Positions 1,685-63,394 of a stretch of DNA of 64,000 nt are shown in pieces. Numbering within the stretch: the first letter of the stretch is position 1; each line of letters starts with the position of its first letter. The notes under the pieces were generated by a model, which worked only from the letters and a program-made list of their open reading frames with translations, did no database searches and was not told the DNA's origin. The DNA is from Saccostrea cucullata (lineage: Eukaryota), in assembly GCF_032062105.1 (NCBI RefSeq), contig NW_026930969.1, positions 124,001-188,000 on the forward strand, written 5' to 3'. The position numbers and the translations under genes are program-made.

Positions 1685-1773
1685 CATCGTCGCAAACCAC
1701 GGCCAAAATGCACGATCCTCTCCCATTCTGGAGAGAGCTTTATGCGGACTCCGGACTGTGGCTTGAGACGATG
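1685..1773. mobile_element. 89-bp MITE with 18-bp imperfect TIRs and 9-bp TSD
   Basis: CATCGTCGCAAACCACGG ... CTGTGGCTTGAGACGATG flanked by CACAGATGC at 1676-1684 and 1774-1782. The right end of a related copy lies at ~86-130. Confidence 0.75.
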
Positions 1774-1782
1774 CACAGATGC

Positions 1783-2901
1783 ACCTTGGTATAATGACTG
1801 GATAACTAACTTCCTAACAAAAAGGACAATGAGAGTCCAGTTAGATGGGGAATACTCAGACGACACCAGCGTGGAATCCGGGGTACCGCAGGGAACAGTA
1901 CTTGGACCCATACTTTTTCTCTGCCATATAAATGATCTCCCTGATGCAGTAAAATCTTCAGTTAGGCTCTTTGCCGGATTGCCTTTTGTACAGGGAAATT
2001 AAATCGTCCAAAGATCAAAACCTACTACAAAAGGAACTCGAAAAACTGGAACAGTGGGCATCTGACTGGGGTATGAGATTTAACGCAAAGAAATGCTATA
2101 TACTAAGCATACGTAGAAAAATTAACAGCCAATACACCCTTGAGAACCACACCCTAGAACAAGTGGCATCAAATCCCTACTTAGGACTCCAAATACAAGA
2201 AGACCTGAAATGGAAAGAACATATAAACAACATCTCAAATAAAGCCAACTCCACCCTAGGCTTCCTAAGAAGGAACTTACAACACTGTCCAAGGGAATGT
2301 AGAAAGATTGCATATATATCACTAGTAAGATCTATAATGGAGTATGGAGCTGTCATCTGGGATCCATACACCAAACAAGAATCAACAAAATTAGAATCCA
2401 TCCAAAGAAGAGGTGCGAGATTCATAACAAAAGATTATAAATCAAGGGAAGAGGGCACAATGACAAAGATGCTCAAAGATTTTGACCTTCCCTTACTACA
2501 AACCAGACACCAACAACAACGTCTAATCTTTTTTTACAAAGTGGTTGAGGGGCAGATACCAGCTATTAAATCAGACCAATATATTACATTCCAAAAACCG
2601 AAAAGAAACATCAGACCGAAAGTGTACGAGGACTATCAAGCGACAAATATTATATGTAATAGGATCAGGAATAACAGCCGTGCAGTTGAGATACTTGATA
2701 CAAAGACAGACCAACTGAAGAACTCATTCTTTTACGAACAGCTATAGATTGGAACCATCTAGATAGAAAAAGTTCCGCGCCCCCAAGCTAGAAAGCTTTA
2801 AGTCAGCGCTGGAACATCTTCGCGACTAATGCGCTCTCTACCCGTCACGTCAAAGCCCAATGAGTCACTGTGACGTAACAATACAGATACAGATACAGAT
2901 A
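1783..2901 (+). mobile_element. 5'-truncated, frameshifted CR1-group LINE (RT C-terminal part plus microsatellite tail)
   Basis: ORFs 1742-2002 and 1971-2747 give GVPQGTVLGPILF, a broken FADD motif (frameshift ~1972-1980), WGMRFNAKKC, YLGLQI, YISLVRSIMEY and LESIQRRGARF. Ends in (ATACAG)n at 2881-2901. Confidence 0.9.
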
Positions 2902-3321: not shown

Positions 3322-6300
3322 ATGGCGGCTTCATCTACATTACATAAACTTCCTCTTCATTTAGCCGCAGAGAAAAATGACATTGAGAAGCTCGAGCAGA
3401 TTTTACTCGATGGAGATTTTAATACAGTTAATCTCCAAGACCAGACGGGTAGGACAGCGCTTCACTGTCTTTTGGATTCTCCTGGCTTTACTGATTTGGA
3501 CGAAGTAAAGAGAGGAATTCAGATCCTGTTAGACAACGGAGCGAAACAAACATGGAGAGACGCCCCTTCATACAGTGGTTCAGAACTACTTGGAATTTAT
3601 TCCAGAAATTATTCGGTTTGTATTGACTCACGGCCAAAACTACTTGATGGGCACGCAGGATGAGAACGGATATTCAGTATTTCATTTGTTCATGTCAGAA
3701 TTCAGTGACCTTGTTGTAAAAAGCAAAGGGTATATGGAACTTCTGCAAGAAAAGAATGAATTCCTTCAAAGTTTACTCCAAGGTGAAATTGCAAATTATA
3801 ATTTTTCTGCACTTCTTGATCAAAAAGAGCGCAATGGATATTCTGCATTTCATACGTACATCGGAAATTCCGACTGCTCCCCAGAGTTAGTACAAATAAT
3901 GATCAGTTGTGGAGCTGATGTAAACACATCTTCTAATTTAGGAATCACTCCCCTTATGGGGTCTGTGTTCAGACGGCGGAGGGATGTTGTAGAAATGCTG
4001 TTGAAGGCAGGTGCAAACCCGAATCAAACAGATATATTTGGTCAAAGTTGTACCTTTCGTGTTTTTACAAACGATTGTTTTGAATTGCTGAACCAGTTTG
4101 ACGCCGATTTTCGCATTAAGGATAAGTTTGGAAGGACCCCGATCACAAATTGTGCACTCTACACGCCGGAAGATCTCCCCAACACAGGCATCGTCATCTC
4201 CAACGAGTTCTCTCATTATCCACCTTTATTTGAAAAGATTTTAGAAGCCGGGGTTAATATTAATGAGTTAGACAGACATGGTTCCTCTGCACTTCACTAT
4301 GGTGCATGGTATGGAGATCCTACAATGGTTGGATCACTTTTGCAACATGGAGCAGATTTAAATATTCTAAACCACCATGACAACTCACCTTTGGATTTAG
4401 CAATGCACGTTGGAAATGATAACCTTTACAAATTTTTTGGTAAAACAGATAATGGGGAAATTCGACCCGAGTGTGAAACAAGATATTGCCGACTTATTAT
4501 TAATGAAGCAGAAACAGATCATATGAAGACTGTGCTGGAGGATTATTTAGGAATTAAAGATGACCCAGTTTATCTTTTGACGTCACTTGTGAAATCTCCA
4601 AGGGTAGGGATGACGGAAAAAAGACCCGAATCAAGGCTTATCAAGTCGGAGGTAACAAACCTAATGCAAAGGATAGCGGATGTTGTTGGAAAATTGAATC
4701 CGCTTTTTTCTTGTAAAATTTATCCAACAGGCAGTTCGTCTGAAGGTACGAAAGTAGCAGATCCAGACGAATTTGATTTTGTGTTCTGCTTGGAAAACTT
4801 CTCAAAAAACTGTGTACCACATCAGGATGATGTTATTTTGAACAGTGGTTTTGCAAGTTTAAAGATAGATTCTAGTGAAAGCCTGGGGAAATTTGATTTA
4901 TTTCTTGATGGAAAGATCCTTTCAGCAGAACGTGTTCGGAGTACTTTTCAAGATTTGGTTACTTCTGCCCTAAATACCGCGGGCACATGGACCTCCGAAT
5001 TTTTATATTTCGACGGTCTCCTTGGGTTTCCCATGGATAAACCTGTGATCAAGCTGGAAATCCATTGGTTTGGCCCCTTAATAAAGCATATGATAATCAG
5101 TGTAGATATTGTTCCAGCATTTTTGCCAAAGAATTGGCGACCCGTGGAATTAAGCGAAAAACAACCCTTATTTTCTGTTGACGAACAGTATTTGCTTATT
5201 CTACATTCACCAGAAGGCTGTCAATGGGGCGATGAAGATGATGAACAATTAGTGAGAATTTCTAGCTGTCTGATGGATAAACATTATCTAAAAAGTCTTC
5301 CTCAAATCTGTACCGAAAGTTACGCGGCAGCCAAGATTCTGAAGAGCTCCAATTTTCCTCCTAGTGTTCAGTTTGACGACGACTCATCAGCGGAAGACTC
5401 CTCATCATTTGTCGATTCGGAAGAGTCCTCTCAGAAATCGGACGAAGAACAAAAAAACAGCCGAAAGAACAGAACTGGAAGAAGTAACAATTACAAAAGG
5501 GAATACAGTGGATACAACTTTCAAAATGTACAAGCATCAGTTGAATCACCACCTTTCGAAGATCCAGTAGAGGTATCAACATCCAGTGGACTATCCGACG
5601 ATATCATTGAAAGATATGAAACACAGAGATCAAAAAGGAATCTAACTATGAATTGGCTCATGGAAATTGATGATACGTGCAAAGTTAGGAAGATATTTAC
5701 CCCCAAAGACAAAAACTTGACACCGATTAACGGGGCTTCCTGCAAAACTTTACCGTCTGAAGTGAATACAGACAAATCTATTAATTGTAATTATCAGGGA
5801 TTAGCGGAGAGTGCAGATTCTGAGGATAATGGTAGGGTGTTAGAGTCAATAAAGAAAAATACAGAAGAAGAACCAACAAACTCTTACAACGCAGTATCCA
5901 CTCTAAGCTTAGATGATGGGAATGAAGCCAAACACGTTCCAAATAGTGAGGTAAATTCTGATGAAATGGAATCTATGTCATCTGACAATGTTGAATTGGA
6001 GGGTGGCGACATCGTTTCTGCATCTGATGAAATATCGAGCTACATGTTAAAAATGTGTTTATTCCATGTTTTACAAGAAGAGAAGAATAGAGATTGTGAG
6101 ATTCCTCTGTACACTCTTCTGGAACTGACCATTAAAATTTACGAAAAGCTGTTAGCGTTTGCTGTAGAAGGTCGTCTACCTTCTTATTTTCTTCCTTTTA
6201 TAGACGTGTTTACATACACCAATACACACATTAGAATAATTCCAGAGGAGGAATTAGACCTGGAGAGAAAACAACAGTGTAAACGGATTCAAACCTTTTG

Positions 6301-6346
6301 TAAAGTTATTTTGGGTATCTTAAAGCAAAATCCTAATGGCTATTAA
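3322..6346 (+). CDS. Ankyrin-repeat cGAS/Mab-21-like nucleotidyltransferase (cGLR), copy 1; frameshift at ~3544
   Basis: ORFs 3322-3663 and 3575-6346. Ankyrin motifs (LPLHLAA, GRTALH, GITPLM, GSSALHYGA, SPLDLA) precede PTGSSSEGTKVADPDEFDF, SVDIVPA, RISSCLMDK, SSYMLKMCLFHV and LPSYFLP. 14-nt deletion relative to copy 2 after GACAACGGAGCG. Confidence 0.9.
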
Positions 6347-7739
6347 GCTTAGTGAACGTTAACCCCATAAAAGATATTAATATTTATGGTTATTGATATT
6401 TACTGCCATAAAAGTAACCTATATCAATTATATACAGTACAACAAAAAAAAATATAGTTATTGATATATCGGTGTCTCTGTTGTTAAATAGGTGATTGTT
6501 CCTTGCAAAAATAACTAATGTTTTGATTGTAACTTTGCTGATAAAAAAAAACGAAATTTATAGAGGTAAACCATTGCATGAATGACTGTCTAAATTGTAA
6601 AGTTCAACTGCGTTCAGCGATTTTGTTTTGTAATAACTAATAAATGATTTATGTTATGTCCATTTTCTTATTTTTATGGTTTTGGTAACATTTTTGGGCG
6701 GTTTTTGGTGTAGGTTTCATTTGTAACTATAATGTTGTTGACCAAAATAGATGATTGTATCTTGTTCATGAAAACGATCAAAGAAAGATGCTACTGTTTA
6801 TGAATTTGCCCTGGGGATTGCTCTGTCTTGGGTTATGAACAAAAAGGTGCAGGTTTCATTTGTTAAGGTGACCAAACTTGCATGGATGATACATCTAGGA
6901 TAAACAGACTCCAAATAACAAAGAGGTATAAAGATGGAACACGTTGAAAGATAGAATTATAATATCAAATAAAAACTGCATTTATATTTTCTTCTTTTTT
7001 TATGACATTTTTCTATTACTTACTGCAAGGACCACAATCTTTTATATCTGACCTTCATTTTCAGCTAGTTTTTGGCAGGCAGTGTACCAAACTTAGTTCT
7101 GATGATATGAAATACAAATTATTTTCTAACATTTAGCACAAGAGATGCAAATCTGCTTCAGATGCTGGATTTTGATTACATTTTCATGAAGAAGAACTAG
7201 TTTAAATTTTTTAAGGTCTATTTCAAAGTATTTAAATGCTTAAATATTTTCATTTTTGGAAGTTTCACTTTTGGTTGGTTAATTGTGTGACTTTGCCTTA
7301 CTAAAGACAACATTTTGAGGTTTGTCTTTAATGAATTTAAAACATCATTTCATATGATCATGGTCATGAAATTTAAAACACACTTATAAATGCAGCAAAT
7401 CCACGTGCTAGGCCACACTTCTTGATTCGTCCCCCCTGCTGCTGGATTTTTTTTAAAATGATAAGTGGTACATCGACTATTTGTAATTTTATCTCGAAAA
7501 AGACATTGGAACTGTAAATATTACTTACTGAAGGAACGCAATGTGTTATAGAACTCAGATACGTTTCTAGCTATGGCGGACAGTGCACGAAGTTCTTTTG
7601 AAATGCAATTTATTTTCTAAAATTTACTAATCAAGCACCCACAAGATTAACATATATTTCAATATATCAATTGCTGATAAAACAGTCAACAGTACCAGGC
7701 TGATTTTGAGTTCCTTTTAATGACACAAAACTTGTTACG

Positions 7740-8110
7740 AAAATATAAAAAGATTTCAATGCTATCAACTTCACTCAATAAAAATATAACGACAGAAAAT
7801 TCACTGGCTTCAATAAAAATATAACGACAGATTTCAATGCTATCAACTTCACCGGCTTAAAACACGTCCAATAAAAATATAACGACAGATTTCAATGCTA
7901 TCAACTTCAATGGCTTAAAATACGTCCAATAAAAATATAACGACAGATTTCAATGCTATCAACTTCACGTCCAATAAAAATATAACGACAGATTTCAATG
8001 CTATCAACTTCACTGGCTTAAAACACGTCCAATAAAAATATAACGACAGATTTCAATGCTATCAACTTCACTGGCTTAAAACACGTCCAATAAAAATATA
8101 ACGACAGATT
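7740..8110. repeat. Minisatellite, 58-bp unit, ~6-7 full or partial copies
   Basis: Unit AATAAAAATATAACGACAGATTTCAATGCTATCAACTTCACTGGCTTAAAACACGTCC, repeated head-to-tail with internally deleted variants. Confidence 0.95.
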
Positions 8111-8681
8111 TTTTAACATTTTTTCATGAATAATACATCATGAATCGACGTCAAATTAATTATATTTGATATTTCAATAAAACTTTTCCTGAAAAAAAAT
8201 CATATTTGTTTTTTTCCTTGTGTAGAAGTATTTTATCCTGCATTTACTTTTTCCTGCCGAAAAAAAAACATGTTAGGTTTAAAATTTTCTAAGTTAAAAA
8301 TATTACGCTTTAATTTTGATTAACTATATTAAAGTGTGATGCATATTATAATGGAATAAATGTACAACCATTTAAATCATAGTGTGTTTATTATGTTTTC
8401 ATTTACATTGTTAATACTTACAATTTATTATTAGCTCTCGTGATATTTCATGATTACATCATAATTAATTATACATGTATATTGAAAGACGCATTGGCTA
8501 TATATGGTTTAAAAAAAAATTTCATACTTTTAGCTTCTATGCACCTTTTTCCTTTATGAAATAAAATAACTCCCAATCGTGTTATCTTCCTTATAAAACT
8601 TTAATTATAACCCTCTGACGACAACCTTTAAAAGGAATCAATACACTAAATCTAAAAATAGATTAAAAGAATAAAGGAATA

Positions 8682-11600
8682 ATGGCGACTTCGTCCGTAA
8701 CCGAAAAACTTCCTCTTCATTCTGCCGCCAAAGAAAATGATCTCGTTAAACTCGAACAGCTTTTACTTGATGGGGATTCACATACAATTAATCTTCGGGA
8801 TCAACACGGAAGAACATCTCTTCACTGTCTTTTGGATTCTCCTGCCTTTACTGATTTGGACGAAGTAAAGAGAGGAATTCAGATCCTTTTAGACAACGGA
8901 GCGGACATCAACATACAAAACAAACATGGAGAGACGCCCCTTCATACAGTGGTTCAGAACTATTTGAAATTTATTCCAGAAATCATTCGGTACGTATTGA
9001 CTCACAGCCAAAGTTATGAAATGGAGGCACAGGATGAGGACGGATACTCGCTTTTTCATTTGTTCATGTCTGATTTCAATGACCATGCCAAAGAAAAGGA
9101 AAGATTCCATCAAATATTGAAAGAGAAAGAAGAATTTATTCAAGCCTTGCTTCGGGGAGAAATATTGAAATTTAATTCTTCTGCGCTTTTAAATCAAAAA
9201 GAACGCAATGGATATTCTGCATTTTACACATATATTGGAAATTCTACCTGTGCCACGGATACGGTACAATTAATGATTGATTGTGGTGCTGACGTAAACA
9301 CTTCCTCTGAAATAGGAACCACGCCCCTTATGGAGTCAGTGCTGAGACGACGGACAGATGTTGTAGAAATTCTTCTGAAGGCAGGAGCAAACCCAAACCA
9401 AACAGATATATTCGGTCAAAGTTGTATTTTTCGTGTCTATACTAATGATTGTTTTGAATTGTTGAATCAATATGGCACCAATTTCAAAATAAAAGATAAA
9501 TTTGGACGGAGCCCAATTACAAATGTCGAACTTTACATTTCAGAGGATCTACCTCATTCAAACATTGTCTTCTCCCAAAACTTTTCTAAATATCCTCCTT
9601 TATTTGAGAGGTTTCTTGAAGTTGGACTTAGTTCTAACGAAGTTGACAAGCATGGTTCCTCTCTTCTTCACTATGCTGCATGGCATAGAGATTCAAGAAT
9701 GATCCAAGCTTTGATAGAGCATGGTGCGGATTTGAATATTTTGGATAATGATGGCAACAAACCTTTGGATTTAGCAAAACATGTGGGAAATGATAATGTT
9801 TATAACATACTTGGTGAAACAAATGAGGGGGGAGATCAAAAAAGCAATGAAGCAAAATATTGTAGATATATCATTAATGAAACTGAAACAAACAATATGA
9901 AGACTGTGCTAAATGAGTATTTAGGAATCAAGGATGATCCTGAATACTTAGTGACTTCACTTGTGAAATCTCCGAGATTAGGAATGACGGAAATAAGACC
10001 AGAAGTAAGACAAATTAAAGCAGAAGTAACATGCCTAATGCAAAAAATAGCGAGTGTTGTTGGAAGATTGAATTCACTTTTTTCCTGTAAAGTTTTACCA
10101 ACAGGAAGTTCGTCTGAGGGTACAAAAGTAGCAGATCCAGACGAATTTGATTTTCTGTTCTGCTTGGAAGAATTTTCGAAACATTGCATTCCACATCAAG
10201 ATGATGATATTTTGAATAGTGGGTTTGTAAGTTTAAAGATTCAGCAAGGAGAAGGCACGGAAAAATTTGAAACATTTCTTGATGAATCAACTCTTTCAGC
10301 AGAACTTGTTCGTGGAACCTTCCAAGATTTGGTTACTTCTGCTCTTAACACCCCAGAAATATGGAAATCCGAACACTTGTATTTCGATGGTCTTCTTGGG
10401 TATCCGATGGATAAACCAGTATTAAAGTTAGAACTCCATTGGTTTGGTCCCATTATGAAGCATGAAGCAGTCAACGTAGATATTGTCCCTGCTGTTCAGA
10501 TAAAACATTGGAAGCCAATTGAATTAACTGACAAAAATGTTGTGTGTTCTGTTGAAGAACAGTATTTATTATTGTTCCATTCACCAGAACGTTGCCAATG
10601 GGGCGATAAAGACGATGAACAATTAGTGAGAATTTCTAGCTCTCTGATGGAAAAATGCTATCTAAAAAGTCTTCCCCAGATCTGTACTGAAAGTTATGCG
10701 ACAGCTAAAATTTTAAAAAGCATTAATTTTTCACCCCAGGTTCAATTCAATGAGGAGATAAATATGGAACATATAGCAACACGGGAAATGAGATTGTTGC
10801 AACAGACACATTCAACTTCGGCAAGTGAATGTGTCCATAGAAAAGAGAAGAAAAATAATGAAGTTCCGACAAGTCACGTTGTACAGGACATTTCGAATTC
10901 TGAAGAGCAATCGGCGGGAATTGTTAATAAAACACAACCTTTTAAAAGTAACCCTATCATACCATGGATGATGGATATCGATGAAACTTATAAAGTACGA
11001 AAGTTATTTACTCCAAAGGAAAACGGTAAACCTAGGAACAAAGTATATTTGGATAAACAAATGGGCATGACATGTACAACGTCAGTTTTTGAAAATGACA
11101 AGCATAAATTAATTTATTTCAAACCCATTGAATGTGAGCATGATTTAAATAATCCAAATAATAGTTTTATGGAATCAGAATTGGGTGGACAGTCAACGTG
11201 CGGTCTCAACTCAGAACAAGACCGTGATTTAAAACCCGATTCAGATTTGCCTGATAAGAACTTTGACGAAAATGATGATAGCAATGGCAGCACTGAAGGC
11301 AAATCAAATGTTAGCATCAAAAGTACAAATGCAAAAACTGACAAAGATAGAAAGCGAAAGTTCTGAGGAGATGGAAGATGATTCTTCAGATGATACTGAG
11401 TTGGAAGGCGGTGATGTCGTATATGCGTCAGATGAAATTTCCAGCTACATGTTGAAAATGTGTTTATTTCATGTTGTACATGAAGAGAAAAACAAAAACG
11501 GTGATGTTCCGCCTTTTACTCTTTTGGAACTGACCATAAAGATTTACGAAAAGTTGCTGGCATTCGCTAAGGAGGGTCGTTTACCTTCCTATTTTCTTCC

Positions 11601-11757
11601 TTTTCTGGACGTTTTTACATACGTTAACACTCATATAAAAGTTCTACCAGACGAGGATTTAGAATCTCTAACCAAGCAACAGTGTTTACGAATCCAAGCC
11701 TTTTGCAGGGTTATTCTGGGAATACTGAAGCAAAATCTAAAAAGCGAAGTTTCATAA
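8682..11757 (+). CDS. Ankyrin-repeat cGLR, copy 2; frameshift at ~11348
   Basis: ORF 8682-11366 (ankyrins, PTGSSSEGTKVADPDEFDF, NVDIVPA) continues in another frame as ORF 11263-11757 (EGGDVVYASDEISSYMLKMCLFHV...LPSYFLP). Collinear with copies 1 and 3. Confidence 0.9.
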
Positions 11758-12361
11758 AGATAAAGATGCTGTGCAATTCTTTTTAAACAGACCATGATTT
11801 CCAGCTATAAATAATTATACATGTACATGTATTTTCTGTTGGGTACACAACCCTTTATGTGTGGATTATTTTTTCCAATGAGTTTTGAGAATTTTCATTT
11901 AATTTATTACATTATGCAAATGAAAATTATTAAAATTCCCTTTGTAGTGTACATTGTGTCAGGTCATAATGGTTCATTAACACTACCATATTGAAAACAG
12001 TCTTATGTTGTGTATCTGATTTTAATATTACAGTTTTGCATTCTATAAACTAAAATGGTGGTATTTTATTTCATCATAGTGTAAGATTTTATTTTTAGCC
12101 AGTATCTTAATATGCTTGCATGTTTAATGTGATATTATTTTTGATTAAATAACGTTTTTATAGAAAAAACATTCATTTATATTTTTCATCAAATGCCCTA
12201 GTCAAATAATTGACTTAATCTCATCCTTTCCATCTGCGTGCAGAACTGAAGTCAAGTGGTGAACAGAACATATTTTTTTAAAAAAGAATTTTTAATAATG
12301 CATTGCATTTTCCCATTCAATATTTTAATAAAAGATTATTTTATTAAAATATAGATAAATA

Positions 12362-12428
12362 TAAAAATCCACATGTTGATCAATGGGAACAAGAAGGACA
12401 GTTTCTTGTCAAGAAAGTCTTTAAAAAT
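12362..12428 (+). pseudogene. Orphan, degenerate copy of part of acyl-CoA dehydrogenase exon 2
   Basis: AAATCCACATGTTGATCAATGGGAACAAGAAGGACAGTTTCTTGTCAAGAAAGTCTTTAAAA closely matches 20845-20907 (NPHVDQWEQEGQF..KKVFK). Confidence 0.85.
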
Positions 12429-13357
12429 TTGCATCATTAAAAATTCTTCAAATGAAAAAAGTAGAATAATTTTTGAAAAAAGACAGAGAAGGGGGTTAGC
12501 AAACAAACATATAACCCAAGGACACGATGATTTACAATTGTTTATAATTAATTCCAAAATTTCGTAAAACGTATTGCATATAGAAACACGGAATGGGGCT
12601 GATAACATAAATTTCACCTCGCAAGATGATGTCTGACTTAAGTGACCATGAAACAAAATATTAACATCAAAACTTTAAGGTAGGTATCACCAAGCAATTA
12701 GACTTTGAAATTCTTTTCAGACGCTTTTGATATCTTCTGTGTTGTTGAGAATACTTGAAACGTATGATCCAAACATGATTACCACATGCTAAGCTCAAAA
12801 AAGCTTCATGGCGTCAAGGGTCTTTCTTCTGGTTTAAAATATCGAAGAGCAACACCCCTCTTGATCAGTTGCCATATTGACTGCTTTCAATGTTTTTTTT
12901 ATTTATACTTACAATACTTCTTCGGTTTTTGTAATTTGAGGTTAGCCCACTGGTTGGACGCTTCCGCGTCGTATTCGATCTAATTCAATCTAATTCCCAT
13001 GTTGAAACGAGTACTCTTCATCATAAATATTCATAAATGAAGTATTATATAACCTTTAATATGAATATATCTCATTTTTTTTTTATAAATATCCTATATG
13101 ATATATGAATATATCTTATTCTTTGTACAGCTAATCAAGATAATTGTTTTATTATTAACAAATATCTTCTATGGCAATTCAAAGCTTATTAAATCAGAAT
13201 TATAACTGAAAGACCTCACTGCATTTCCATACGCGTCAAGTACTTTGATAACCCATGTGCATGATAAAGGTAAAGTGCACTTCAGCTGTTTATAGTCGAA
13301 GTTATCATCAAAGACTGTTTCACTGTATGCCATTTTCAGTTCACAGCTTGGGAAACC

Positions 13358-16300
13358 ATGTCCGCTTTGTCTACCGTACATGAACTTCCTCTTCACTCCG
13401 CTGCAGAAGAAAATGACCTTGTTAAGCTCGAGCATCTCTTAATTAATGGAAATTCCTATGCGGTTAATCTCCGGGACAAACATATGGCAGGACGCCTCTC
13501 CACTGTCTTTTGAATGCCAACACCTTTTCTGATTTGGACGAAGCAAAGAGAGGAATTCAAATTCTTTTGGATGGCGGAGCGGATGTTAACATACAGAACA
13601 AACATGAAGAGACACCGCTTCATACAGTGGTTCAGAATTACTTGGAATTTATTCCGGAAATCATTCGATACTTATTAACTCACAGCAAAACTTACGTGAT
13701 GGAAACACAGGATGAAGAAGGATTCTCATTATTTCACCTGTTCATGTCTGATTTCAATGACCATGTCAAAGAAAGCAAGGAATATCAAAAGCTTTTTCAG
13801 GAAAAGAATGATTTCATTAAAAGTTTGCTTCGTGGAAAAATTGTGAAATGTAACTTTTCTGCACTATTGAATCAAAAAGAACGCAAAGGATTATCAGCAT
13901 TCCTTACATTTCTGGCGAATTCTGAATGCCCCACCGACACGGTACAATTAATGATCGACTGTGGAGCTGACGTAAACACTTCTACTGAAATAGGAACCAC
14001 TCCCCTTATGGAGTCGGTTTTCAGACGGCGGAGGGATATCGTGGAAATTTTGTTGAAAGCAGGAGCAAACCCAAACCAAACAGATATATTCGGCCAAAGT
14101 TGTATTTTCCGTGTCTATACCAACGATTGTTTTGAATTGCTGAATCAATATGGTACAAATTTCTACATCAAAGATAAATTCGGAAGGTCCCCAATAACAA
14201 ATGTTGCACTTTACACGCCGGAAGATTTACCTCAGTCAAACATTGTCCTTTCACAGAACTTTTCGAAATATTCACCATTGTTTGAAAAGTTTCTAGAAGT
14301 TGGAGTAAGTTGCAATGAAGTTGATAAGCATGGTTCATCCCTTCTTCATTATGGGGCATGGTATGGGGATTCCACAATGATCAAAACGCTAATACAACAT
14401 GGTGCAGATTTAAATATGTTTGATTTTAATGGCTACTCGCCTTTGGATTTAGCAAAGTATGTTGGAAATGATACCATTTACAGTTTACTTGGTGGACTAG
14501 ACGATGGAACTGACAATGAAACTAAGTATTGTAAATTCCTCATTAATGCAACTGAAAAAGATAATATGAAGACTGTGTTGAATGAATATTTAGGAATTAA
14601 GGATGATCCTGCTTATCTTTTGATGTCACTTGTGAAATCACCAAGATTGGGAATGACTGAAATAAGACCAGAACCAAGACATATCAAGTCAGAAGTCACA
14701 GGACTGATGCACAGGATAGCAGATGTCGTCGGAAGATTGGATCCGCTTTTTGTCTGTACAGTCTATCCAACAGGTAGTTCGTCTGAGGGTACAAAGGTTG
14801 CAGACCCAGACGAATTTGATTTTGTGTTTTATTTGAATATCTTTTCAAACCATTGTATACCGATTCAGGATGTTAACTGTGTGAACAGCGGATTTGCTAG
14901 TTTGAAAATTAAGTCAAATGAAGTTAAAGGGAAGTTCGAATCCTTTCTTGATGATACGACTTTCTCGGCAGATCTTATTAGGGGTACCTTTCAAGAACTA
15001 GTCACCTGTGCTCTTAACAACCCAGACATATGGACCTCTGATTATTTATGCTTTGAAGGTCTAGTTGACTATCCTTCGGATAAGCCAATTCTGAAGTTAG
15101 ATATCGATTGGTACGGTCCCGTTATGAAACATATAATAGTCAGTGTTGATATTGTTCCTGCTGTTCAGATAAAGGATTGGAAGCCCGTGGAAATAAGTGA
15201 TGATCAGCCAATGTGTTCTGTTGACGAAGAATATTTGCTTATCCTTCACTCACCAGAACGCTGCCCTTGGAGCAGTAAAAAAAGTGACCAGCTAGTAAGG
15301 ATTTCAAGCTCTCTTATGGAGAAACAGCTTCTAAGGAACCTTCCTTATATTTGCACCGAAAGTTATGCAGCAGCCAAAATTTTAAAAAGTTTCAATTTTT
15401 GTCCAAAAATTCAGTTTAATGAGGAAATTATCATTGGATCGGATGGTTCCGTCGAAGTTGTGTTTGAGGAGTCACGATCAAGTGAGAAGTTAGAAAATGA
15501 GCAGTGGGATAAAGAGGAAGACAACGTGACAGAACGAAAAGAAGGCAATGAAGATATGAGATGCAATCAGACAACCAGTCAGTTTTTGCCCTCTCGAGAC
15601 TCCGAGGGCAATTCAAAATCTGAAGATGTCACGAATAAAGCACAATCTTCTCAACACAGACCTGTTTTGCCCTGGGTGATGGATATTGATGATACTTATA
15701 ACGTTAGAAAAATATTTACGCCAAAAGAGAGCGAGAAAATGAAGAACAAGACATATACAGATGAAAAAATGGGGATGACATATACAACATCAATTTGTGA
15801 TAAAGACGGACACAAATTAATCTATTTTGAGCCCCTTCCATGTGAAGAGAATCCCAATGATTTGGGTGAAGGTAGTTCAAAATTGGATTGCAAAGAGGTG
15901 AATAGACAGCGAAAGGACAGTCCAAATTCAGAAATAGACTCTGAACAGAGATCTGAATCAGATTGTGCTGATGGGAACAACAGAGCTGAGTTCATCCACA
16001 GAAATGATAACGCTGAAGGCAATACAAAAGATAGCAAGAAAAGTAAAAATCACAATACCGAAGAGGACGTAGGTGGTGTGGAAGGTTCTGATGACTCGGA
16101 AGATGATTCTTCGGTTGATACTGAGTGGGAAGGTGGTGACGTCGTTTCTGCTTTCGATGAAATTTCCAGCTACATGTTGAAAATGTGTCTATTTCATGTT
16201 GTACATCAAGAGAAAAACAAAAATGGCGATGTTCCCCCTTTCACTCTTTTGGAACTGACCATAAAGATTTACGAGAAGTTACTGACGTTCGCCAAGGAGG

Positions 16301-16497
16301 GTCGTTTACCTTCTTATTTTCTTCCTTTCTTGGATGTTTTCACGTATGTTGATACTCATATAAAAGTTATTCCAGAAAAAGATTTAGAATCTGTGTCAAA
16401 GCAGAAATGTGAACGAATTCAAGCTTTCTGTAAGGTTATTTTGGGAATTTTGAAGCAAAATCAGTCAGGCGATGTTACCTCATCTGAGAAATTATAA
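13358..16497 (+). CDS. Ankyrin-repeat cGLR, copy 3; 2-nt insertion frameshift at ~13484
   Basis: True start is ATG 13358 (MSALSTVHELPLHSAAEENDLVKLE, homologous to the starts of copies 1 and 2). An extra AT in AAACATATGGCAGG shifts the frame. ORF 13510-16497 carries the remaining ankyrins and an intact NTase/Mab-21 fold. Confidence 0.9.
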
Positions 16498-19015: not shown

Positions 19016-19528
19016 ATGTCAACAAAAAGTTTATCCAAGTTACTTAGGAGGAATTTTGCGGCAATAAGTCGTCATGGAATACGCTTGAGTTCAACTCAAG
19101 CTCAAAAAAAGAATAAAAATGAATGCTCAGGCGGCATATTCTCAGAGGAACATCAACAGCTGCGGGACTCGTTGAGAAAAGTAAGACCTAGTTCCTGAAC
19201 GTTGCTCATGAACTTTGATCTGTATCATCGGATCCAGGAAAATCCCTATATTTAGCTATATATAGCTTAATTTACATGTATAGCTTTATTTACCTATATA
19301 ATATAGCTTTATTTAGCTATTTTAGAATAAGTTTCTGTTTTATGAAAAGCAGACAAGGTAAGAAAAATAGGTAGATTTAGCTAAATAGCTAAATATAGTG
19401 ATTTTCCCAGACCTGATCATTGTACCTTTTCTGTAAACGACAGGTGGTACTTAGATACATGTGTTTAAACTAATCAGGTGATGACTGTTTTGTGATATTT
19501 CATTTTTAGCTCACCTGAGCCAATTGCA

Positions 19529-19560
<32 letters not shown>

Positions 19561-19577
19561 GTCCGTTGTCTGTCGTC

Positions 19578-19608
<31 letters not shown>

Positions 19609-19611
19609 ATC

Positions 19612-19646
<35 letters not shown>

Positions 19647-22600
19647 TACAAAGTATCCTTTGGTAAAGGGTATTCAAGTTTGTTCAAATGAAGGGCCACA
19701 CCCTTTTCCAAGGGGAGATAATTATGAATTAGAGAAAAATGAATGGCATTTTTAAAAAATCTTCTTCTCAAGAACCACTGGGCCAGGAAAGATGAAACTC
19801 TTGTGGAATCATCCTCAGATAGTGTATATTCCAGTTTGTTCAAATCATGACCCCCGGGGGTAGGGAGGGGCAAAAATGGCCGATCATAGTTTTACATAGG
19901 TATATATAGGAAAAATCTTTAAAAATCTTCTTCTCAAGAACCACTGGGCCAGGAAAGATGAAACTCATGTGGAATCATCCTCAAATAGTGTAAATTCAAA
20001 TTTGTTCAAATCATGACCCCGGGGGTAGGGATTAGCCAATATGGCCGATCAAAGTTTTATATAGGAATATATCTTTAAAAATCATCTTCTCAAGAACCAT
20101 TGAGACAGGGAAGATGACACTTATGTGAAATTATTCTCAGGTAGTGTAGATTCAAGTCTGTACAAATCATGACCCCCGGGGCTAGGGTGGGGCCAAAATA
20201 GCCGACCAAAGTTTTACATTGGAATATATAGTAAAATCTTTTTAAATCTTCTTTTCAAGTACTTCAAAGCCATGATTAGTAATATTTATATGGAATCATC
20301 CTCAGGTAGTGTAGATTCTAGTTCGTTCAAATCATGATCCCCTGGGGAGTTAAAATTCAAGCCACCCCCTAACCTCAGTAAATTTCAGTTCTGATCTGAT
20401 ACGTGCTTTTTCCTAGCCGATGTGCTCAGGTGAGCGCTGTGGCCCATGGGCCTCTTGTGCTTATATTTATCTTAATTAATCTACCAATACCATGTGTTTA
20501 AAGCAAGACAAGCAAAGAGACAAAATCCTGACGATCATTAGAAGTGACATTTTTATTACTTGTCATTTGAGGACTTTCCCAATTCACATATAACAAGTTA
20601 ATAAGGAAAAAACCGATAGTTTAAATAGTTTAAGTTTTTTGTTCAGATTTTAATTGATAATTAAAAGTTTGAAGTCAAATTTATTTGTCATTCAGTCAAG
20701 CTGGCTCATTCATCTGTAGTACTGCTTTCAGATTCATATAGATGGCATCGTGCATATATATATAGTCTTTCTCTGATCCTTGATGTTTACTGCACATTTT
20801 ATATATATTGTTGATAAAAATTTGCAGATCATTGACAAAGAGATAAATCCACATGTTGATCAGTGGGAACAAGAAGGACAGTTTCCTGCTAAGAAAGTAT
20901 TCAAAACTCTGGGAAATGCAGGTCTTCTTGGAGTTACAAAACCCACAGGTATGAAGTCCCTAAAAAAAAGGTATGACTTTTCAGGAAAGGATGTTTTTGT
21001 AACGTCAAGGTATAAACTGTAATGGTACTGACTAGAATACCCATAGCTGGGGCAACTTAACAGGTGCTATACTGTTGAGCTTGAGGTATGATCTTGTCCA
21101 TGTCATCATCTTCCTCTAACATTTGGTGCATACTTGGATAAGACAGGAGAACCTTCCAGATATTAGACTGAAATATTGTTCAAAGGGTTAAGTACAATAA
21201 ATGACGGAATAATCTAGTGGTCAGGTTGGCTTATTTGCTGGTAGCCAGATGTTGAGAATTGAGAAACTGGTAGCCTAGTACTAGGGCATTATCAGAAGAT
21301 CATGGGTTTCATTCTTGTTCTTGGCATGATAAAAATAAAAGATCCCACACTGCTATGACTGTAAATGACTTGCATATAGGTCAAAATTTGTAGCACTGCA
21401 CCTATAGCAGGTGCCGTCTTTTATCAGCTGATGAATTACATGTTTTAGTAAAGGTACAGTCTGGTCTGTTCAAACTACATTTCTGTGTCACTTGCAGAGC
21501 AGACAACATTTGATGATTTGGTCATTGTCTTGCTTGCCAGTTTGCACTATGGCTTTTGTAAAATACCACAATTACCAACCTGGTGACCTTTGAATTTTAC
21601 CATTTACTACATTTTAAAATAGCATATTTTGGATGCTTAATAAGTAACCATAAGCCTAATAATGCTCTTGCTATGATGTTAAGGCACATCTTTCATCATT
21701 ACAGAATATGGTGGCTTGGGACTGGATTACACCTACAGTATTGCTTTAGCAGAAGAGCTGGGTAATATTAACTGTGGAGGCGTTCCCATGGCAATAGGAG
21801 TTCAAACAGACATGTCAACACCTGCACTGGCAAAGTAATTCATGAAAATGTTTTAGAATTCTTTCTTGTTCTGCGAAACTGATTTTAAAAATATGATTAA
21901 ATGGACTTGTATACATGTACCTACACACATTTATACATGTACAATAAAACTTGTTTACTCTTGTCACCACTGATTTAAAAGAAATCATTCAGATTAGACA
22001 AGATCCTGGATTAGACAACATTTTAAACAATTGAATCTACTAAAAGGAATTTGAAAGTTTAAAAGATTGTAATAGGCAGGATTTCAGAATACACAAATCT
22101 GGATTAGTCAGGTTTCACTGTACCTTTTTATGCCAGCCTATACATTCCTGCTTTACTTTCTTTTTTTTGCCAGGTTTGGCAGTGATAAGATGAAGAGAGA
22201 GTTCCTGGCTCCTTCCATAGCTGGTGATGTTGTGTCCTGTATTGGGGTCAGTGAGGTCGGGGGAGGATCTGATGTTGCCAGTAGGTGTTATTGAGCTGTA
22301 TTTGATCAAGTGTCAGAAATATAATATATCCATGTAACATTTGTCAAGAAATGGGGGAGAGATATACAGTTATTTTTGGGGAGGGGGGTAAAGAATGAGG
22401 CTCTCATTCATTGATAGTTTGTTGTAACACTACCAGACTGAGTATTAACTTCAGCAGGGTGGCTCATAACTCATAACCATAGAAAGCCATAAATTTTAAA
22501 TATAATACAATTCTAAAAATGACTGTTGTCTCTTGCTTTAGGTGTAAAAACCACAGCAGTGAAGAGTGGTGGAGATTACATCATCAATGGTGGGAAGATG

Positions 22601-25600
22601 TGGATAACCAATGGAGCCCAGGCGGATTGGATGTGTCTCCTTGCCAACACCAGTGAGGGGCCGGCACACAGGAATAAATCGCTCATCTGTCTTCCCATGA
22701 ACTTACCAGGTATATACACATGTTGAAAACATTTTTAGTGAGAAATTTAAATGAACAAAGGGGTTAAGTTGTAAAATTGATCTTATCATAAGTTTTTTTT
22801 TATTTGTAATAGCTTCTTTGAGTTTTTTATGAAAATTCATCAAATTTTCATTAAATTTTCCAATTTTAAAAAATGTTTTCTTTTTTCCCAATTGCATAAA
22901 AATTCTTTCATTAATAGTTCCCATTTTTAAAAATGACTTTTCTTCAAATGTCTGTCAAATTTAAATGAACAAAGGGGTTAATTTGTAAACTCTAGATCTT
23001 ATTTAATAAAGTTTTTTTGATTTTCAAAAACTCTTTGAATTTTATTTCCAAATTCATCAAATTTTCATTAAACAATTTTTCAAAATGCTTTTTTCCAATT
23101 GCCTAAAGTTTTTTCTAAATTTCAATATAAAATGGCACACAAAATGACTACACTAAGATACATAACTCTGGTTATTTGGTTTTTGATTTTTACATTTATG
23201 GTGTTGCCGTGGTTACTAAAAATAGAAATTTCTGTAAAATTCTTTGAAAATGCTACTCCTCCTACAGTTTTGGTCTGATTTCAAAATAACTTGGCACACA
23301 AGTAGACTACACTAAGACACATAATTCTGTGTATCTGTTTTTGATTTCGATAAAACGGTGTTGCCGTGGTTACTAAAAATAAAAATTTCTGTAAAATTCT
23401 TTGAAAATTCTACTCCTCCTACAGTTTTGGTCTGATTTCAAAATAACTTGGCACACAGGTAGACTACACTAAGACACATAAATCTGTGTATCGGTTTTTG
23501 ATTTCATTGAACGGTGTTGCCGTGGTTACTAAAAATAGAAATCTCTGTGAATTTTTTTGAAAAGCTATGTGTTCCTACAGTTTGGGACTTCTGATTTCAA
23601 TATTACTGGCACACAATATTTCTTAACTGAAGAGGTTCAATTTTATTCTATATATTGTATTGCAATTTATTTTTGATTTCAATTTTTTTATTCTATAGCT
23701 GTGCAACCCCTTGAGAATTTAATAAAAATCCACAAATCTCAGACAGAGGAAGGCTTTTGAAATTTCTTCAAAACAACTCCTCCTACATTTTGGCTGATTT
23801 CAAAATAACTTGGCACACAAGTGGAGAGCCTCAGGTCATAAGATACATAATTCTGGTATCTGTTTTTGTTCCAGTAAATGTGTTGCAGTTTACTAAAAAT
23901 AGAAATTTCTGTAAAATTGTTTTCAATGAAAGACTGTTATACAGTATATTTGTGATTTCAATATAACTTGGCACATGGACACTAACTAACATAATTCTGT
24001 GTAACTGTTTTTGAGGTCGATGGAAAGTGTTGCAGTGGTTACTAAAAATAGAAATTTCTGTAAAATTCTTCAAAATGAGGTCCTTATACAGTTTTGGTGA
24101 GAGAATTTCAATATAATTTGCACACAATACACTAAGAAACATAATGTCTGTAATCTTTGGTACATATATATTTATTGTTCATGGATGTTAAAAATAAAAA
24201 TGTGGTAAAATTTGAAAATTCTAGTCCTCCTACAGTTTTGTCTGATTTCAAAATAACTTGGCACACAGGTAGACTACACTAAGACACATAAATCTGTCTA
24301 TCCGTTTTGATTTCTGAGACGAGTTTTGCCGTGGATCATTACTCAGAAACTATTGGAAGGATTTGTCTGAAAATTTGTACACATATTATTCACCATATGA
24401 AGTTGTGCACCTGATATTTTCATATAACTTGGCACATTATTATTTTGAATTTTACAGGTGTTTTTTCATTTTTATTTTGTGGTTTTGTCCGTGACCGTTT
24501 CTCAGAAACTATTGCAAGGATTAATCTGAAAATTTGTACACTTTTATTCACCATATGAAGGTGTGCACCTGGAATTTTCAACTCTTTTTGTTAATTTTTT
24601 TGCATTTTACAGGTTTTATTTTTTATTTTAATTGACTTGTTCATTTTGGGCTCATGTATAAGGTTTGAGATATAGAATCTAGAATATCTGTTCAAAAATA
24701 CTACAGCTTAAAACTACTCATAAAAACTTACAAAAAAAAGAAACATCATCAAGTGTTAAAAACAGTTTTTACATTGCACAGAAAGATAATGTAATTTCAT
24801 TTTTTTAGGAATAAACTGGACATGCATCCAGTTAAAGATAAATTAATGGGCATTTGGTGTTGGAAGTTGTTAAGGCATATCTCTTATCAAGCGTGTGTGT
24901 GTTATCTAATCTCCAGGGAATAAGGCACAAGAATTAAAGATCTCTCTTCTCTTATTCTCTTAATTGTAATTTATTGTCTGTCAAAGCACTTCATTACTGG
25001 ATGACCAGCTCTTTATTTTCAAAATGCATTTCAAATTGATATATCAAGATTAATTTGATTTTGTATAATGGTTTTTTTTTTAACAATCAGTTTGCAGAGT
25101 GACATAACACATAATTGCAATTTATTTTTTTAATGCAGAAATAAAAAAAAATAAAATGAAAAAATAAAAAAAATTGTTACAATGGAATTACAATATATAT
25201 GATGTTTCATTTGGTTGCACCTTTGTTTCATTCATTAAGAAACATGATGAGCAATTATATTTCACTGCAAATTTTTGTAAGTAAATTGTGAACAAGATCC
25301 ATAAAGTATTTTTGAATTGGCACCTTCTCTGAAAAACCCAGCGGGGGGTATTTGTCCCTATTGGACAGTTCTAGTTTTGCAATATTTCATACTTTCAGAT
25401 ATCTGATTCTCAAATATTTTTCTTGCTCCTGTTGAGTTTAAGATAATGAGGTTTGACGGTATTCTCTGAAGTCAATGAAAGTAAAGAGTTCTCTTGTCCT
25501 TTATAAAATAAATATTTTAATTGAACTTAATTTACATGTACAGGACAATATGTTTGCTTTTTTGTAAATCTTTAATAAAATTAACCTCTATTAGTAAAAT

Positions 25601-25773
25601 TATTCCACAAAACATGCTTTACTTTCACTTCTGTGATAAATTCTTAATCCTGTCATTTGTCTTGTAGAGATTTCCGGCTGTTGTCCATTGGAGGGGGAGC
25701 TGATGAGGTCATGCTGTCAATCATATGTAAATACATGAACACCCTGCCACTACCACCAAGCAAACAGAAGTGA
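19016..25773 (+). CDS. Acyl-CoA dehydrogenase (acdh-6/AtuD-like subfamily), multi-exon; middle exons not found
   Basis: GT-AG exons 19016-19180, 20828-20948, 21705-21834, 22174-22280, 22542-22709, 25668-25773. They encode an Arg/Ser/Leu-rich presequence, EYGGLG, IGVSEVGGGSDVA, YIINGGKMWITNG and DFRLLSIGGGADEVM. Confidence 0.9.
19227..19417. mobile_element. Small palindromic MITE in ACAD intron 1
   Basis: GGAAAATCCCTATATTTAGCTA ... TAGCTAAATATAGTGATTTTCC inverted repeats. Confidence 0.55.
19503..20458 (+). mobile_element. Helentron/HINE-like non-autonomous element with ~166-bp internal satellite repeats
   Basis: 5' TTTTAGCTCACCTGAGC with short IR, GTC/GTCT microsatellite, tandem units (TTCTCAAGAACCACTGGGCC...CATGACCCCCGGGG), 3' CTCAGGTGAGC and palindrome GGCCCATGGGCC-TCTTGT. 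Same family as 33651-34106 and 62376-63598. Confidence 0.85.
21268..21432 (+). mobile_element. Degenerate SINE remnant in ACAD intron 2
   Basis: TAAAAGATCCCACACTGCT...GCATATAGGTCAAAATTTGTAGC resembles the body of the SINE at 54216-54485. Preceded by a decayed tRNA-like head. Confidence 0.5.
23130..25376 (+). mobile_element. 5'-truncated Helitron/Helentron-like element carrying ~157-bp tandem repeats
   Basis: GACTACACTAAGA recurs at 23146, 23305 and 23462, with further degenerate units to ~24330. The 3' end GCGGGGGGTATT-TGTCC CTATT GGACA-GTTCTAG-TT has a hairpin plus CTAG. No 5' terminus found. Confidence 0.7.
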
Positions 25774-29070: not shown

Positions 29071-30206
29071 TTACACATTTGATTCACATCTTTCTCGAGC
29101 CGTTTCATGCATGGCTTCGTATGAAGTTTCACGCACTTCTGCACAAGGTTCGTGTGACGTGTCATGAACACCAGCATTGTGTTCTGGCGGTTCATGAACT
29201 CCCACGCACGGTTCCTGTGACAAAAGTGTACTTCTCGTGTGTCTAGAACTGATTTCCGCCGTTTTGTATCTGTAACATTTAAAACAGTTTACAAACAAGA
29301 GTACTCGTCGACAATTTGGAGTAAATATAAAGTAAATAAAAGGATTGATAGTAAAATTCAGATGAAGTAGGATAAACGCTATTCGATATATCACGATATA
29401 TGGTATCGATATTTCGATTTCCCGGGCTAATTTGATCGTATCGTGTATATTTATCGGTAACGTTGTCACGAGATACGACAAGACCACGGTTGAAACGATT
29501 TTGGACATTTTCTTGCGTGTAGCTTCTCTGTCATTTGTAATGGATTCCTTAAGAGCTCGCAGCTTTAGGAAATGGCAAACTAAAATGATGATAATCGGCA
29601 CAAAGGTCACGATTATCGTGATAACAAAATTCACCATTTTTCCCAGCGATGGATTTTTGCTTAATTTAACAGAATAGATGTAGAAGGACGCAGGAATGGT
29701 ACATAAAATCCATATGGAAAGAGATACACGAAAAACTGTTCTGTTTGTTTGTCTTGCCAAACTTGACAGAGGGTGGGCAATCATGAAGTACTGCTGTATG
29801 GACAGGAATGTCACGTGGGATGCTGACGAAAGAGCACTCGTTATGACCAAAATACTTAGTATAATAGCAACTACGTCACTTTCAGTTCCAGAAGGAATGA
29901 AAAACCAAGATGCACTAGAAATGTATTGAAAACCAAGTACAGCAAATCGGCCAATGCCAAAGCCGCAAATCCGAAGAAAATCGGTCTGTGGAGACGTCTG
30001 ATGCGGAAAATAATTCCGAGCACTCCAGAATTGGCCAGTATTCCAACTAAGGACACACAAGTAGCAATAACTATAATGGGGGAACAAAAAAGAGCTTTGG
30101 AGCATACATTTTCTTCCTCCTTGTAAACTGAGGAATTATTTGACATGGTTAGGGTTTCTTGTATTCTACTGAAATAATTCATCCTATTATCTGTTAATGT
30201 TGTCAT
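29071..30206 (-). CDS. Intronless class A (rhodopsin-like) orphan GPCR; 1-nt frameshift at ~29930
   Basis: ORF 29871-30239 gives TM1-2 (GILANSGVL, LALADLLYL). ORF 29071-30105 gives TM3-7 (LSIQQYFMIAHPL, SIWIL, TTLP, NFTINPFIY). One extra T in the T4 run at 29929-29932 would join them. Start could be ATG 30206, 30182 or 30146. Confidence 0.85.
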
Positions 30207-62375: not shown

Positions 62376-63394
62376 ACAAGAGGCCCATGGGCCACAACGC
62401 TCACCTGACCACTGTGGCTAGAAAAAAAGTAGAAATTGGTTTTATAATTGAAAAGTTTAAATCCAAAAGTAAATCTTTGACCAGTTATGGTTTTGCTTTT
62501 CTTGAGAAGATGATTTTTAAAGAATTTTCCTATATCTTTCTATTTAAAACTTTGGTCGGCCATTGTGGCCCCGCCCTACCCCCAGGGGTCATGAAAACAG
62601 ATTAGAATCTACACTCTCTGAGGATGCTTCCATATAAATATGATCAATTATGGCTTTGTTATTCTTGAAAAGAAGATTTTTAAAGAATTTTCCTATATAT
62701 TTCTATGTAAAACTTTGGTCGGCCATTCTGGCCCCGCCCTACCCCCGGGGGTCATGATTTGAACAAACTTGAATCTACACTACCTGAGGATGCTTCCATA
62801 TAAATATGACCAATCACGGCTTTGTTATTCTTGAGAAGAAGATTTTTAAAGAATTTTCCTATATATTTCTATGTAAAACTTTGGTCGGCCATTTGGCCCC
62901 GCCCTACCCCCGGGGGTCATGATTTGAACAAACTTGAATCTACACTACCTGAGGATGCTTCCATATAAATATGACCAATCATGGCTTTGTTATTCTTGAG
63001 AAGAAGATTTTTAAAGAATTTTCCTATATATTTCTATGTAAAACTTTGGTCGGCCATTCTGGCCCCGCCCTACCCCCGGGGGTCATGATTTGAACAAACT
63101 TGAATCTACACTACCTGAGGATGCTTCCATATAAATATGACTAATCATGGCTTTGTTATTCTTGAGAAGAAGATATTTAAAGAATTTTCCTATATATTTC
63201 TATGTAAAACTTTGGTCAGCCATTGTGACCCCGCCCTACCCCCAGGGGTCATGATTTGAACAAACTTGAATCTACACTTCCTGAGGATGTTTCCCCATAA
63301 GTTTCATTTTTCCTGACACAGTGGTTCTTGAGAAGAAGATTTTTAAAACATACAACCAAATTTTCATTAATTCCCAATTATCTCCCCTTAAATG

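What the first reader, a model, noticed from the sequence alone, without database searches (positions are those of the whole stretch)
3322..16497. Tandem array of three ankyrin-fused cGAS-like receptors: candidate innate-immune sensor/second-messenger locus
Seen: three intronless ~1000-codon paralogs, each with multiple N-terminal ankyrin repeats followed by an invariant PTGSSSEGTKVADPDEFDF, then VDIVPA, RISS..M(E/D)K, AKILK, SSYMLKMCLFHV and LPSYFLP. Known: these match the cGAS/Mab-21 GS activation loop, E-x-D...D metal triad and C-lobe motifs. The vertebrate HCC-C zinc thumb is absent. Animal cGLRs make cyclic dinucleotides for STING and are expanded in bivalves. Inference: ankyrins are protein-binding modules, so these may be sensors gated by protein rather than nucleic acid, diversifying by tandem duplication. 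Ankyrin-cGLR fusions may already be catalogued, but I know of no characterised ligand or product for this architecture.
Basis: partly seen in the sequence, partly recalled or inferred. Interest (0 to 1): 0.85.

Follow-up and report, generated by a model that had tools for sequence, protein, structure and literature searches.

The report
Oyster ankyrin-cGAS-like receptor triplet, frameshifted
Three side-by-side oyster genes encode ankyrin-repeat proteins fused to a cGAS-like immune enzyme; that fusion type is already catalogued but apparently untested, this subfamily adds a long acidic insert I found described in no paper, and all three copies are frameshifted in this assembly.

Summary
In detail: three tandem, intronless ankyrin + Mab-21/cGLR genes (3322-6346, 8682-11757, 13358-16497) with GS loop, E-x-D...D triad, cGAS fold (Z 30.4) and no zinc thumb. 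Each copy carries one frameshift (-14, -5, +2 nt). Gene 2 is in frame, with low RNA coverage, in runs of a close relative, and dN/dS near 0.24 shows the breaks are recent. The triplet is syntenic in Saccostrea echinata and single-copy in Magallana angulata. Ankyrin-cGLR fusions are already catalogued (Li et al. 2023) and form a large acidic clade; the scan noted another in this genome (s1-710911). No member was seen in that paper's biochemical screen. The distinctive feature is a 190-290 aa acidic insert with a small folded beta core in the C-lobe loop, marking a monophyletic subfamily (oysters, mussels, pearl oyster, a crinoid). Best reading: a dinucleotide synthase not gated by nucleic acid, probably protein-gated, signalling to STING; activity, ligand and product are untested. 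Diversifying ankyrins are not supported (dN/dS 0.13-0.22). Verdict: new variant of a known kind; interest 0.42.

The parts
3322..6346 (+). Gene 1: ankyrin-cGLR, about 1010 codons, frameshifted by a 14-nt deletion at 3543/3544
   Evidence: orthologue P0007 in S. echinata, 85.5% DNA identity
4730..5107 (+). Gene 1 active site: GS loop 4730-4735, E-x-D 4769-4777, third Asp 5105-5107
5375..5998 (+). Gene 1 acidic insert; keeps only the first conserved hairpin (5654-5707)
8682..11757 (+). Gene 2: ankyrin-cGLR, about 1020 codons; 5-nt deletion at 11347/11348 cuts off the C-terminal helices. In frame, with low RNA coverage, in a close relative
   Evidence: intact orthologue P0003, 88% DNA identity
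8682..9857 (+). Gene 2 ankyrin region, about 10 repeats
   Evidence: helix pairs in the model of orthologue P0003
10104..10481 (+). Gene 2 active site: GS loop 10104-10109, E-x-D 10143-10151, third Asp 10479-10481
10749..11403 (+). Gene 2 acidic insert with beta core at 10965-11126
12342..12431 (+). Duplicated remnant of an exon of the downstream acyl-CoA dehydrogenase gene, read as the scar of a DNA-level tandem duplication
13358..16497 (+). Gene 3: ankyrin-cGLR, about 1045 codons; 2-nt insertion at 13482 ends the 5' frame after 51 codons; in-frame Met at 13699
   Evidence: orthologue P0002, 86% DNA identity
14527..15417 (+). Gene 3 NTase lobe and first C-lobe helices: GS 14773-14778, E-x-D 14812-14820, third Asp 15148-15150, RISS 15298, AKILK 15373
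15418..16128 (+). Gene 3 acidic insert (236 aa, net charge -28): two disordered linkers around a four-strand core at 15673-15834
16129..16497 (+). Gene 3 C-terminal helical bundle (SSYMLK 16165, LPSYFLP 16306)

Best explanation
The genes are Saccostrea-lineage tandem copies of a conserved ankyrin-cGLR. The intact protein is most likely a normally silent cGAS-type nucleotidyltransferase that makes a cyclic dinucleotide for STING. It is probably switched on not by double-stranded nucleic acid but by a protein or other basic ligand engaging the ankyrin solenoid, with the acidic insert as a regulatory element. Shown: fold, catalytic residues, purifying selection, acidity, STING domains in the genome, low RNA coverage of gene 2 in a relative. 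Inferred: catalysis, product, ligand class, role of the insert. The copies in this assembly are recent nulls or partial nulls in a birth-and-death family; assembly error is not excluded.
For: Fold: mouse cGAS Z 30.4, rmsd 2.9 A over 331 residues; Cv-cGLR1 Z 29.0. G, S, both Asp and two phosphate-binding Lys equivalents are invariant in 80 homologues, Glu 98%. All 129 near relatives with room for an N-terminal domain carry ankyrins. Full-length model pTM 0.81 suggests a defined ankyrin-enzyme arrangement. Clade pI median 5.1, none above 8, while nucleic-acid-sensing cGLRs have pI above 8.5 and acidic ones are proposed to sense non-nucleic-acid ligands (10.1101/2023.02.22.529553). dN/dS about 0.24. 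STING ligand-binding-domain exons on several contigs. Gene 2 covered in three RNA or probable-RNA runs.
Against: No activity, ligand, product or induction data. Whole-protein pI is a crude proxy and I could not inspect the model's surface. Shrimp Mab21 proteins act through IKK-epsilon with no detectable cGAMP (PMC12928593). All three copies are broken here, and two of three in S. echinata. Gene 3's 5' part had almost no RNA coverage.
Confidence: 0.5

Rival explanations
1. Tripwire variant: the disordered acidic insert holds the enzyme off, and cleavage by a pathogen protease, or displacement by a basic pathogen protein, activates it.
For: The insert is kept across bivalves and a crinoid with a folded core; its linkers evolve fastest (dN/dS 0.49-0.62); long inserts recur at this loop in other branches. 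Bacterial CD-NTases are activated by cleavage of a disordered loop (10.64898/2026.03.04.709575).
Against: Most of the clade has only 4-40 residues here. Raised dN/dS fits relaxed constraint on disordered sequence. The bacterial loop was not shown to lie at the same position. No conserved cleavage motif seen.
Confidence: 0.12
2. Scaffold role: the protein promotes TBK1/IKK-epsilon signalling by binding partners, and nucleotide synthesis is not its main output.
For: Three shrimp Mab21 proteins did this without detectable cGAMP synthesis (PMC12928593); ankyrins bind proteins.
Against: The catalytic triad and phosphate-binding residues are invariant across a very divergent clade, which a pure scaffold would not need.
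Confidence: 0.12
3. Conventional nucleic-acid-sensing cGLR in which ankyrins and insert only localise or tune the enzyme.
For: All cGLRs with known ligands sense dsDNA or dsRNA; oyster cGAS-STING responds to poly(I:C) (PMC8218723).
Against: Core pI about 5 with net charge -10 to -16 even without the insert; neutral spine helix; no zinc thumb; DNA-contact Lys positions replaced.
Confidence: 0.12
4. Substrate-directed nucleotidyltransferase: the ankyrins recruit a protein or RNA that is nucleotidylated, and no diffusible messenger is made.
For: Ankyrin fusions to other NTase families exist (ankyrin + MTPAP-like clusters); predicted defined ankyrin-enzyme packing.
Against: The fold is the caged cGAS architecture with its acceptor-pocket Arg/Ser/Tyr kept; I know of no cGLR that does this.
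Confidence: 0.08
5. The array is a decaying pseudogene cluster with no present function in this species.
For: Three of three copies broken; about 7 of 12 ankyrin-cGLR loci in this genome broken against about 18 of 20 intact protocadherin-sized exons.
Against: dN/dS 0.24 in every copy, one lesion per gene, and gene 2 in frame in three other samples.
Confidence: 0.06

Closest known systems
ANK-cGLR architecture of Li et al. 2023 (10.1101/2023.02.22.529553, Fig 1C, Table S2)
   Same: N-terminal ankyrins fused to a cGLR with a complete active site. CAC5359674.1 of their Table S2 is my P0206 and falls in the same broad clade. Bivalve expansion.
   Different: Catalogued only: none of eleven ankyrin accessions or six clade motifs I searched occurs in the visible screen table (the stored sequences are truncated). 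The C-lobe insert is not mentioned in the passages read.
Cv-cGLR1 of Crassostrea virginica (PDB 8gjw)
   Same: Best sequence-profile hit among solved structures (E 2.5e-29); Z 29.0; no zinc thumb; similarly long spacing between the second and third acidic residue (100 against 110).
   Different: Tested with dsDNA/dsRNA ligand panels in Li et al.; its solved chain has no ankyrins and no insert.
Vertebrate cGAS
   Same: Fold (Z 30.4), GS loop, E-x-D...D triad, conserved C-lobe Arg, Lys, Tyr and Lys positions.
   Different: No zinc thumb, acidic surface, ankyrins. The insert replaces the short loop after the post-thumb helix, which in human cGAS is the lysine-rich DNA site C loop (from memory; my paper search for it found nothing).
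Acidic auto-active cGLRs such as Pd-cGLR
   Same: pI about 5; proposed to sense a positively charged ligand that is not nucleic acid.
   Different: Single-domain enzymes without ankyrins or insert.
Protease-activated bacterial CD-NTases (EcCdnG)
   Same: cGAS-family enzyme with a disordered surface loop.
   Different: Bacterial, loop of about 30 aa; positional equivalence not tested; an analogy only.

Membership tests
cGLR (Li et al. 2023 criteria) | GS activation loop followed 8-20 residues later by [DE]h[DE]h | tested here: met
   TGS, 11 residues, EFDF in all three genes
cGLR (Li et al. 2023 criteria) | Third acidic residue 50-90 residues further on | tested here: met
   Asp invariant and aligned to the cGAS third Asp. 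Spacing is 110, above the literal window, but active Cv-cGLR1 has 100 (counted)
cGLR (Li et al. 2023 criteria) | Homology over both the NTase core and the C-terminal helix bundle | tested here: met
   PF03281 and PF20266 hits; profile alignment to cGAS spans both lobes. In gene 2 the bundle is out of frame in this assembly
cGLR (Li et al. 2023 criteria) | Predicted structural homology to cGAS/cGLR | tested here: met
   Foldseek E 6.6e-11; VIA-align Z 30.4, rmsd 2.9 A, 331 aligned
cGLR (functional) | Ligand-dependent synthesis of a cyclic dinucleotide | not testable with these tools
   needs an enzyme assay
Nucleic-acid-sensing cGLR / cGAS | Basic ligand-binding surface (pI above 8.5, basic spine helix) | tested here: not met
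   pI 4.8-5.2, core pI 5.1-5.3, spine net charge about -1; sequence proxy only, surface not computed
Vertebrate cGAS | Zinc thumb | tested here: not met
   Fixed 20-residue span without the thumb in 78 of 80 homologues
ANK-cGLR architecture | N-terminal ankyrin repeats in the same chain as the cGLR domain | tested here: met
   continuous in intact orthologues P0003, P0004, P0135
Protease-activated CD-NTase | Activation by cleavage of a surface loop | not testable with these tools
   only a disordered insert is shown
Intact protein-coding gene in this assembly | Uninterrupted reading frame | tested here: not met
   one frameshift per copy

The most novel reading that the evidence does not exclude
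An animal cGLR subfamily, shared by bivalves and a crinoid, in which a long acidic insert with a small folded core acts as a built-in autoinhibitor or bait: a pathogen protease or basic protein, captured with the help of the ankyrins, removes it and triggers dinucleotide synthesis. It would be an animal counterpart of protease-sensing bacterial CD-NTases.
Probability: 0.12. Interest if true: 0.85.

Novelty: new variant of a known kind. Interest (0 to 1): 0.42.

Why it matters
Every animal cGLR with a known ligand senses double-stranded nucleic acid, and what activates the acidic ones is open. This clade is large, uniformly ankyrin-fused, acidic and catalytically intact, so it is a good place to look for a protein-gated cGLR. 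The insert gives a simple deletion experiment, and intact single-exon orthologues exist in farmed oysters. The locus itself adds little: tandem, partly broken cGLR arrays are common in bivalves, and these three copies are not the ones to assay.

Tried and rejected
Ankyrin diversification: rejected at domain level. Gene conversion among copies: no clear tract. Intron explanation for the breaks or the insert: rejected, since orthologues are single exons that contain the insert. A nonsense codon in paralogue L004 suggested: rejected, it is the natural stop. General assembly error as the sole cause: disfavoured but not excluded. Interferon-response-like elements: no cluster at the three starts. 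Atlas search with the insert core: no hit; Atlas structure search of the full model gave only ankyrin matches. Paper searches for a characterised ankyrin-cGLR found only Li et al.; subscription papers are not covered. One read-laying run covered gene 2 and the start of gene 3 only: gene 1's break was not checked and gene 3's was inconclusive because rows were hidden.

Full report
Observation. The window holds three co-oriented paralogues at 3322-6346, 8682-11757 and 13358-16497, spaced 5360 and 4676 nt apart and 74-77% identical in DNA. The nearest relatives are from Saccostrea echinata, so the source is very probably a Saccostrea oyster; this is inferred from similarity.

Breaks. None of the three is an open frame. 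Against the S. echinata orthologues, gene 1 lacks 14 nt at 3543/3544, gene 2 has a frame-shifting loss at 11347/11348, and gene 3 has 2 extra nt at 13482. Three runs from a close relative (reads mostly 90-99% alike) carry 5 more nt at the gene 2 break, which puts it in frame. A poly(A) RNA run and two other runs cover gene 2 at low depth but give almost nothing over the first 1.1 kb of gene 3. dN/dS against the orthologues is 0.27, 0.24 and 0.24, so the genes were under purifying selection until recently. S. echinata has independent lesions: a stop at codon 823 in copy 1 and two 1-nt shifts in copy 3, with copy 2 intact.

Error or null allele. Of the ankyrin-cGLR loci in this genome, five are intact and six or seven broken. 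About 18 of 20 protocadherin-type frames of similar length are intact (a rough count by eye, Fisher p 0.012 for 5:6 against 18:2). The three lesions are not homopolymer slips. However, the neighbouring GPCR has lost 1 nt in a T run relative to M. angulata, so local assembly error is not excluded. I favour real null alleles in a birth-and-death family. The Met at 13699 follows a 51-codon 5' frame and could yield a 932-aa protein lacking about three repeats; in gene 1 the matching Met at 3647 is overlapped by the 5' frame. Its use is untested; the lead came from note s1-703932.

History. The triplet is syntenic in S. echinata. M. angulata has one intact gene at the same place, upstream of an acyl-CoA dehydrogenase and a GPCR, both also present in the window. 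A remnant of a dehydrogenase exon at 12342-12431 points to DNA-level tandem duplication. dS is 0.33-0.38 between orthologues, 0.63-0.96 between paralogues and saturated to M. angulata, so the triplication falls after the split from Magallana and before the two Saccostrea species parted. Ankyrin dN/dS is 0.13-0.22 and ankyrin dN matches that of the enzyme core.

Anatomy. The model of gene 3's C-terminal 657 residues (pTM 0.78) matches cGAS and Cv-cGLR1 (Z 30.4, rmsd 2.9 A, 331 residues). In 80 homologues the GS pair, both catalytic Asp and two C-lobe Lys are invariant and the catalytic Glu is 98% conserved. The zinc thumb is absent. The full-length model of intact P0003 shows about ten ankyrin repeats with pTM 0.81, which suggests a defined ankyrin-enzyme arrangement; I could not view the coordinates. 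The proteins are acidic: pI 4.8-5.2, core without insert 5.1-5.3, spine helix near neutral, clade median 5.1 with none above 8. Two positions that are DNA-contact lysines in cGAS (numbering from memory, aligned through) are Thr and Ala here.

The insert. Between the AKILK helix and SSYMLK lies a 190-290 residue acidic insert. It is predicted as two disordered linkers around a four-strand core (block pLDDT 84-91). The first hairpin is conserved in all subfamily members; gene 1 has lost the second. A tree of the core enzyme with the insert removed puts all 23 rows bearing this core in one branch (SH-aLRT 100, quick search). It includes Saccostrea, Magallana, Mytilus, Pinctada and the crinoid Anneissia. 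Most other relatives have 4-40 residues at this loop, but unrelated long inserts arose there in several other branches. The insert evolves fastest (dN/dS 0.49-0.62) and has no Atlas hit. I found it independently; the scan's note s1-703815 agrees but is not independent evidence.

What is known. A profile search found 456 clusters at E 1e-10 or better; among the best hits, all 129 with room for an N-terminal domain carry ankyrins. Li et al. 2023 list ankyrin-cGLR as a recognised architecture with many bivalve, crustacean and coral entries, including CAC5359674.1, which is P0206 in my tree. None of the ankyrin accessions or clade motifs I searched appears in their screen table, while a control motif did; that table is truncated, so 'untested' is likely rather than proven. 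The same paper reports that nucleic-acid sensors have pI above 8.5 and proposes non-nucleic-acid ligands for acidic cGLRs. The genes meet the sequence and structure criteria for cGLRs but fail the features of nucleic-acid-sensing ones.

Mechanism. Most likely (0.5), the intact protein is a silent dinucleotide synthase activated by a protein or other basic ligand through the ankyrins, with the insert as a regulator, and signals to STING, whose ligand-binding domain is encoded on several contigs. Rivals: tripwire insert (0.12; precedent in bacteria), kinase scaffold as in shrimp (0.12), ordinary nucleic-acid sensor (0.12), substrate-directed transferase (0.08), dead array (0.06). Catalysis, product, ligand and immune role are all inferred.

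Verdict. The feature is real and correctly identified. The architecture and tandem, partly broken cGLR arrays are known in bivalves; the insert-bearing subfamily appears undescribed in the papers I could search. New variant of a known kind, interest 0.42 rather than 0.85. Broken frames were handled in pieces or with X at the break.

Noticed in passing
window 19049-25764 (+): Exons of an acyl-CoA dehydrogenase, 89-98% identical in protein over most exons to the M. angulata gene; syntenic anchor.
   Followed up: partly
window 29191-30150 (-): Intronless rhodopsin-type GPCR with a net 1-nt loss in a T run near 29905 relative to M. angulata; looks like a homopolymer assembly error.
   Followed up: partly
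window 1742-2747 (+) and 43291-45150 (-): LINE-like reverse transcriptase fragment upstream of gene 1 (weak RVT_1 hit); a 619-aa ORF with no Pfam hit further on.
   Followed up: no
window 58682-60100 (+): 472-aa rhodopsin-type GPCR in one open frame.
   Followed up: no
window 19755-20347 and 62478-63294: Tandem arrays with a 166-bp unit, resembling the known oyster satellite (from memory).
   Followed up: no
L007 and L008 (contigs C10220, C18470): Two ankyrin-cGLR copies 92.8% identical; one intact, the other with a 5-nt deletion in a short direct repeat. Possibly alleles or recent duplicates.
   Followed up: partly
L004 (contig C12533): Intact second paralogue of the insert-bearing subfamily (1056 aa) in the same genome, orthologous to S. 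echinata LOC133181155.
   Followed up: yes
P0198, P0212: Proteins of about 2250 aa; P0198 (Ruditapes) shows two ankyrin-cGLR units in tandem.
   Followed up: no
Atlas clusters: Ankyrin repeats fused to poly(A)-polymerase-like (MTPAP) nucleotidyltransferases form separate clusters, a parallel ankyrin-NTase pairing.
   Followed up: no
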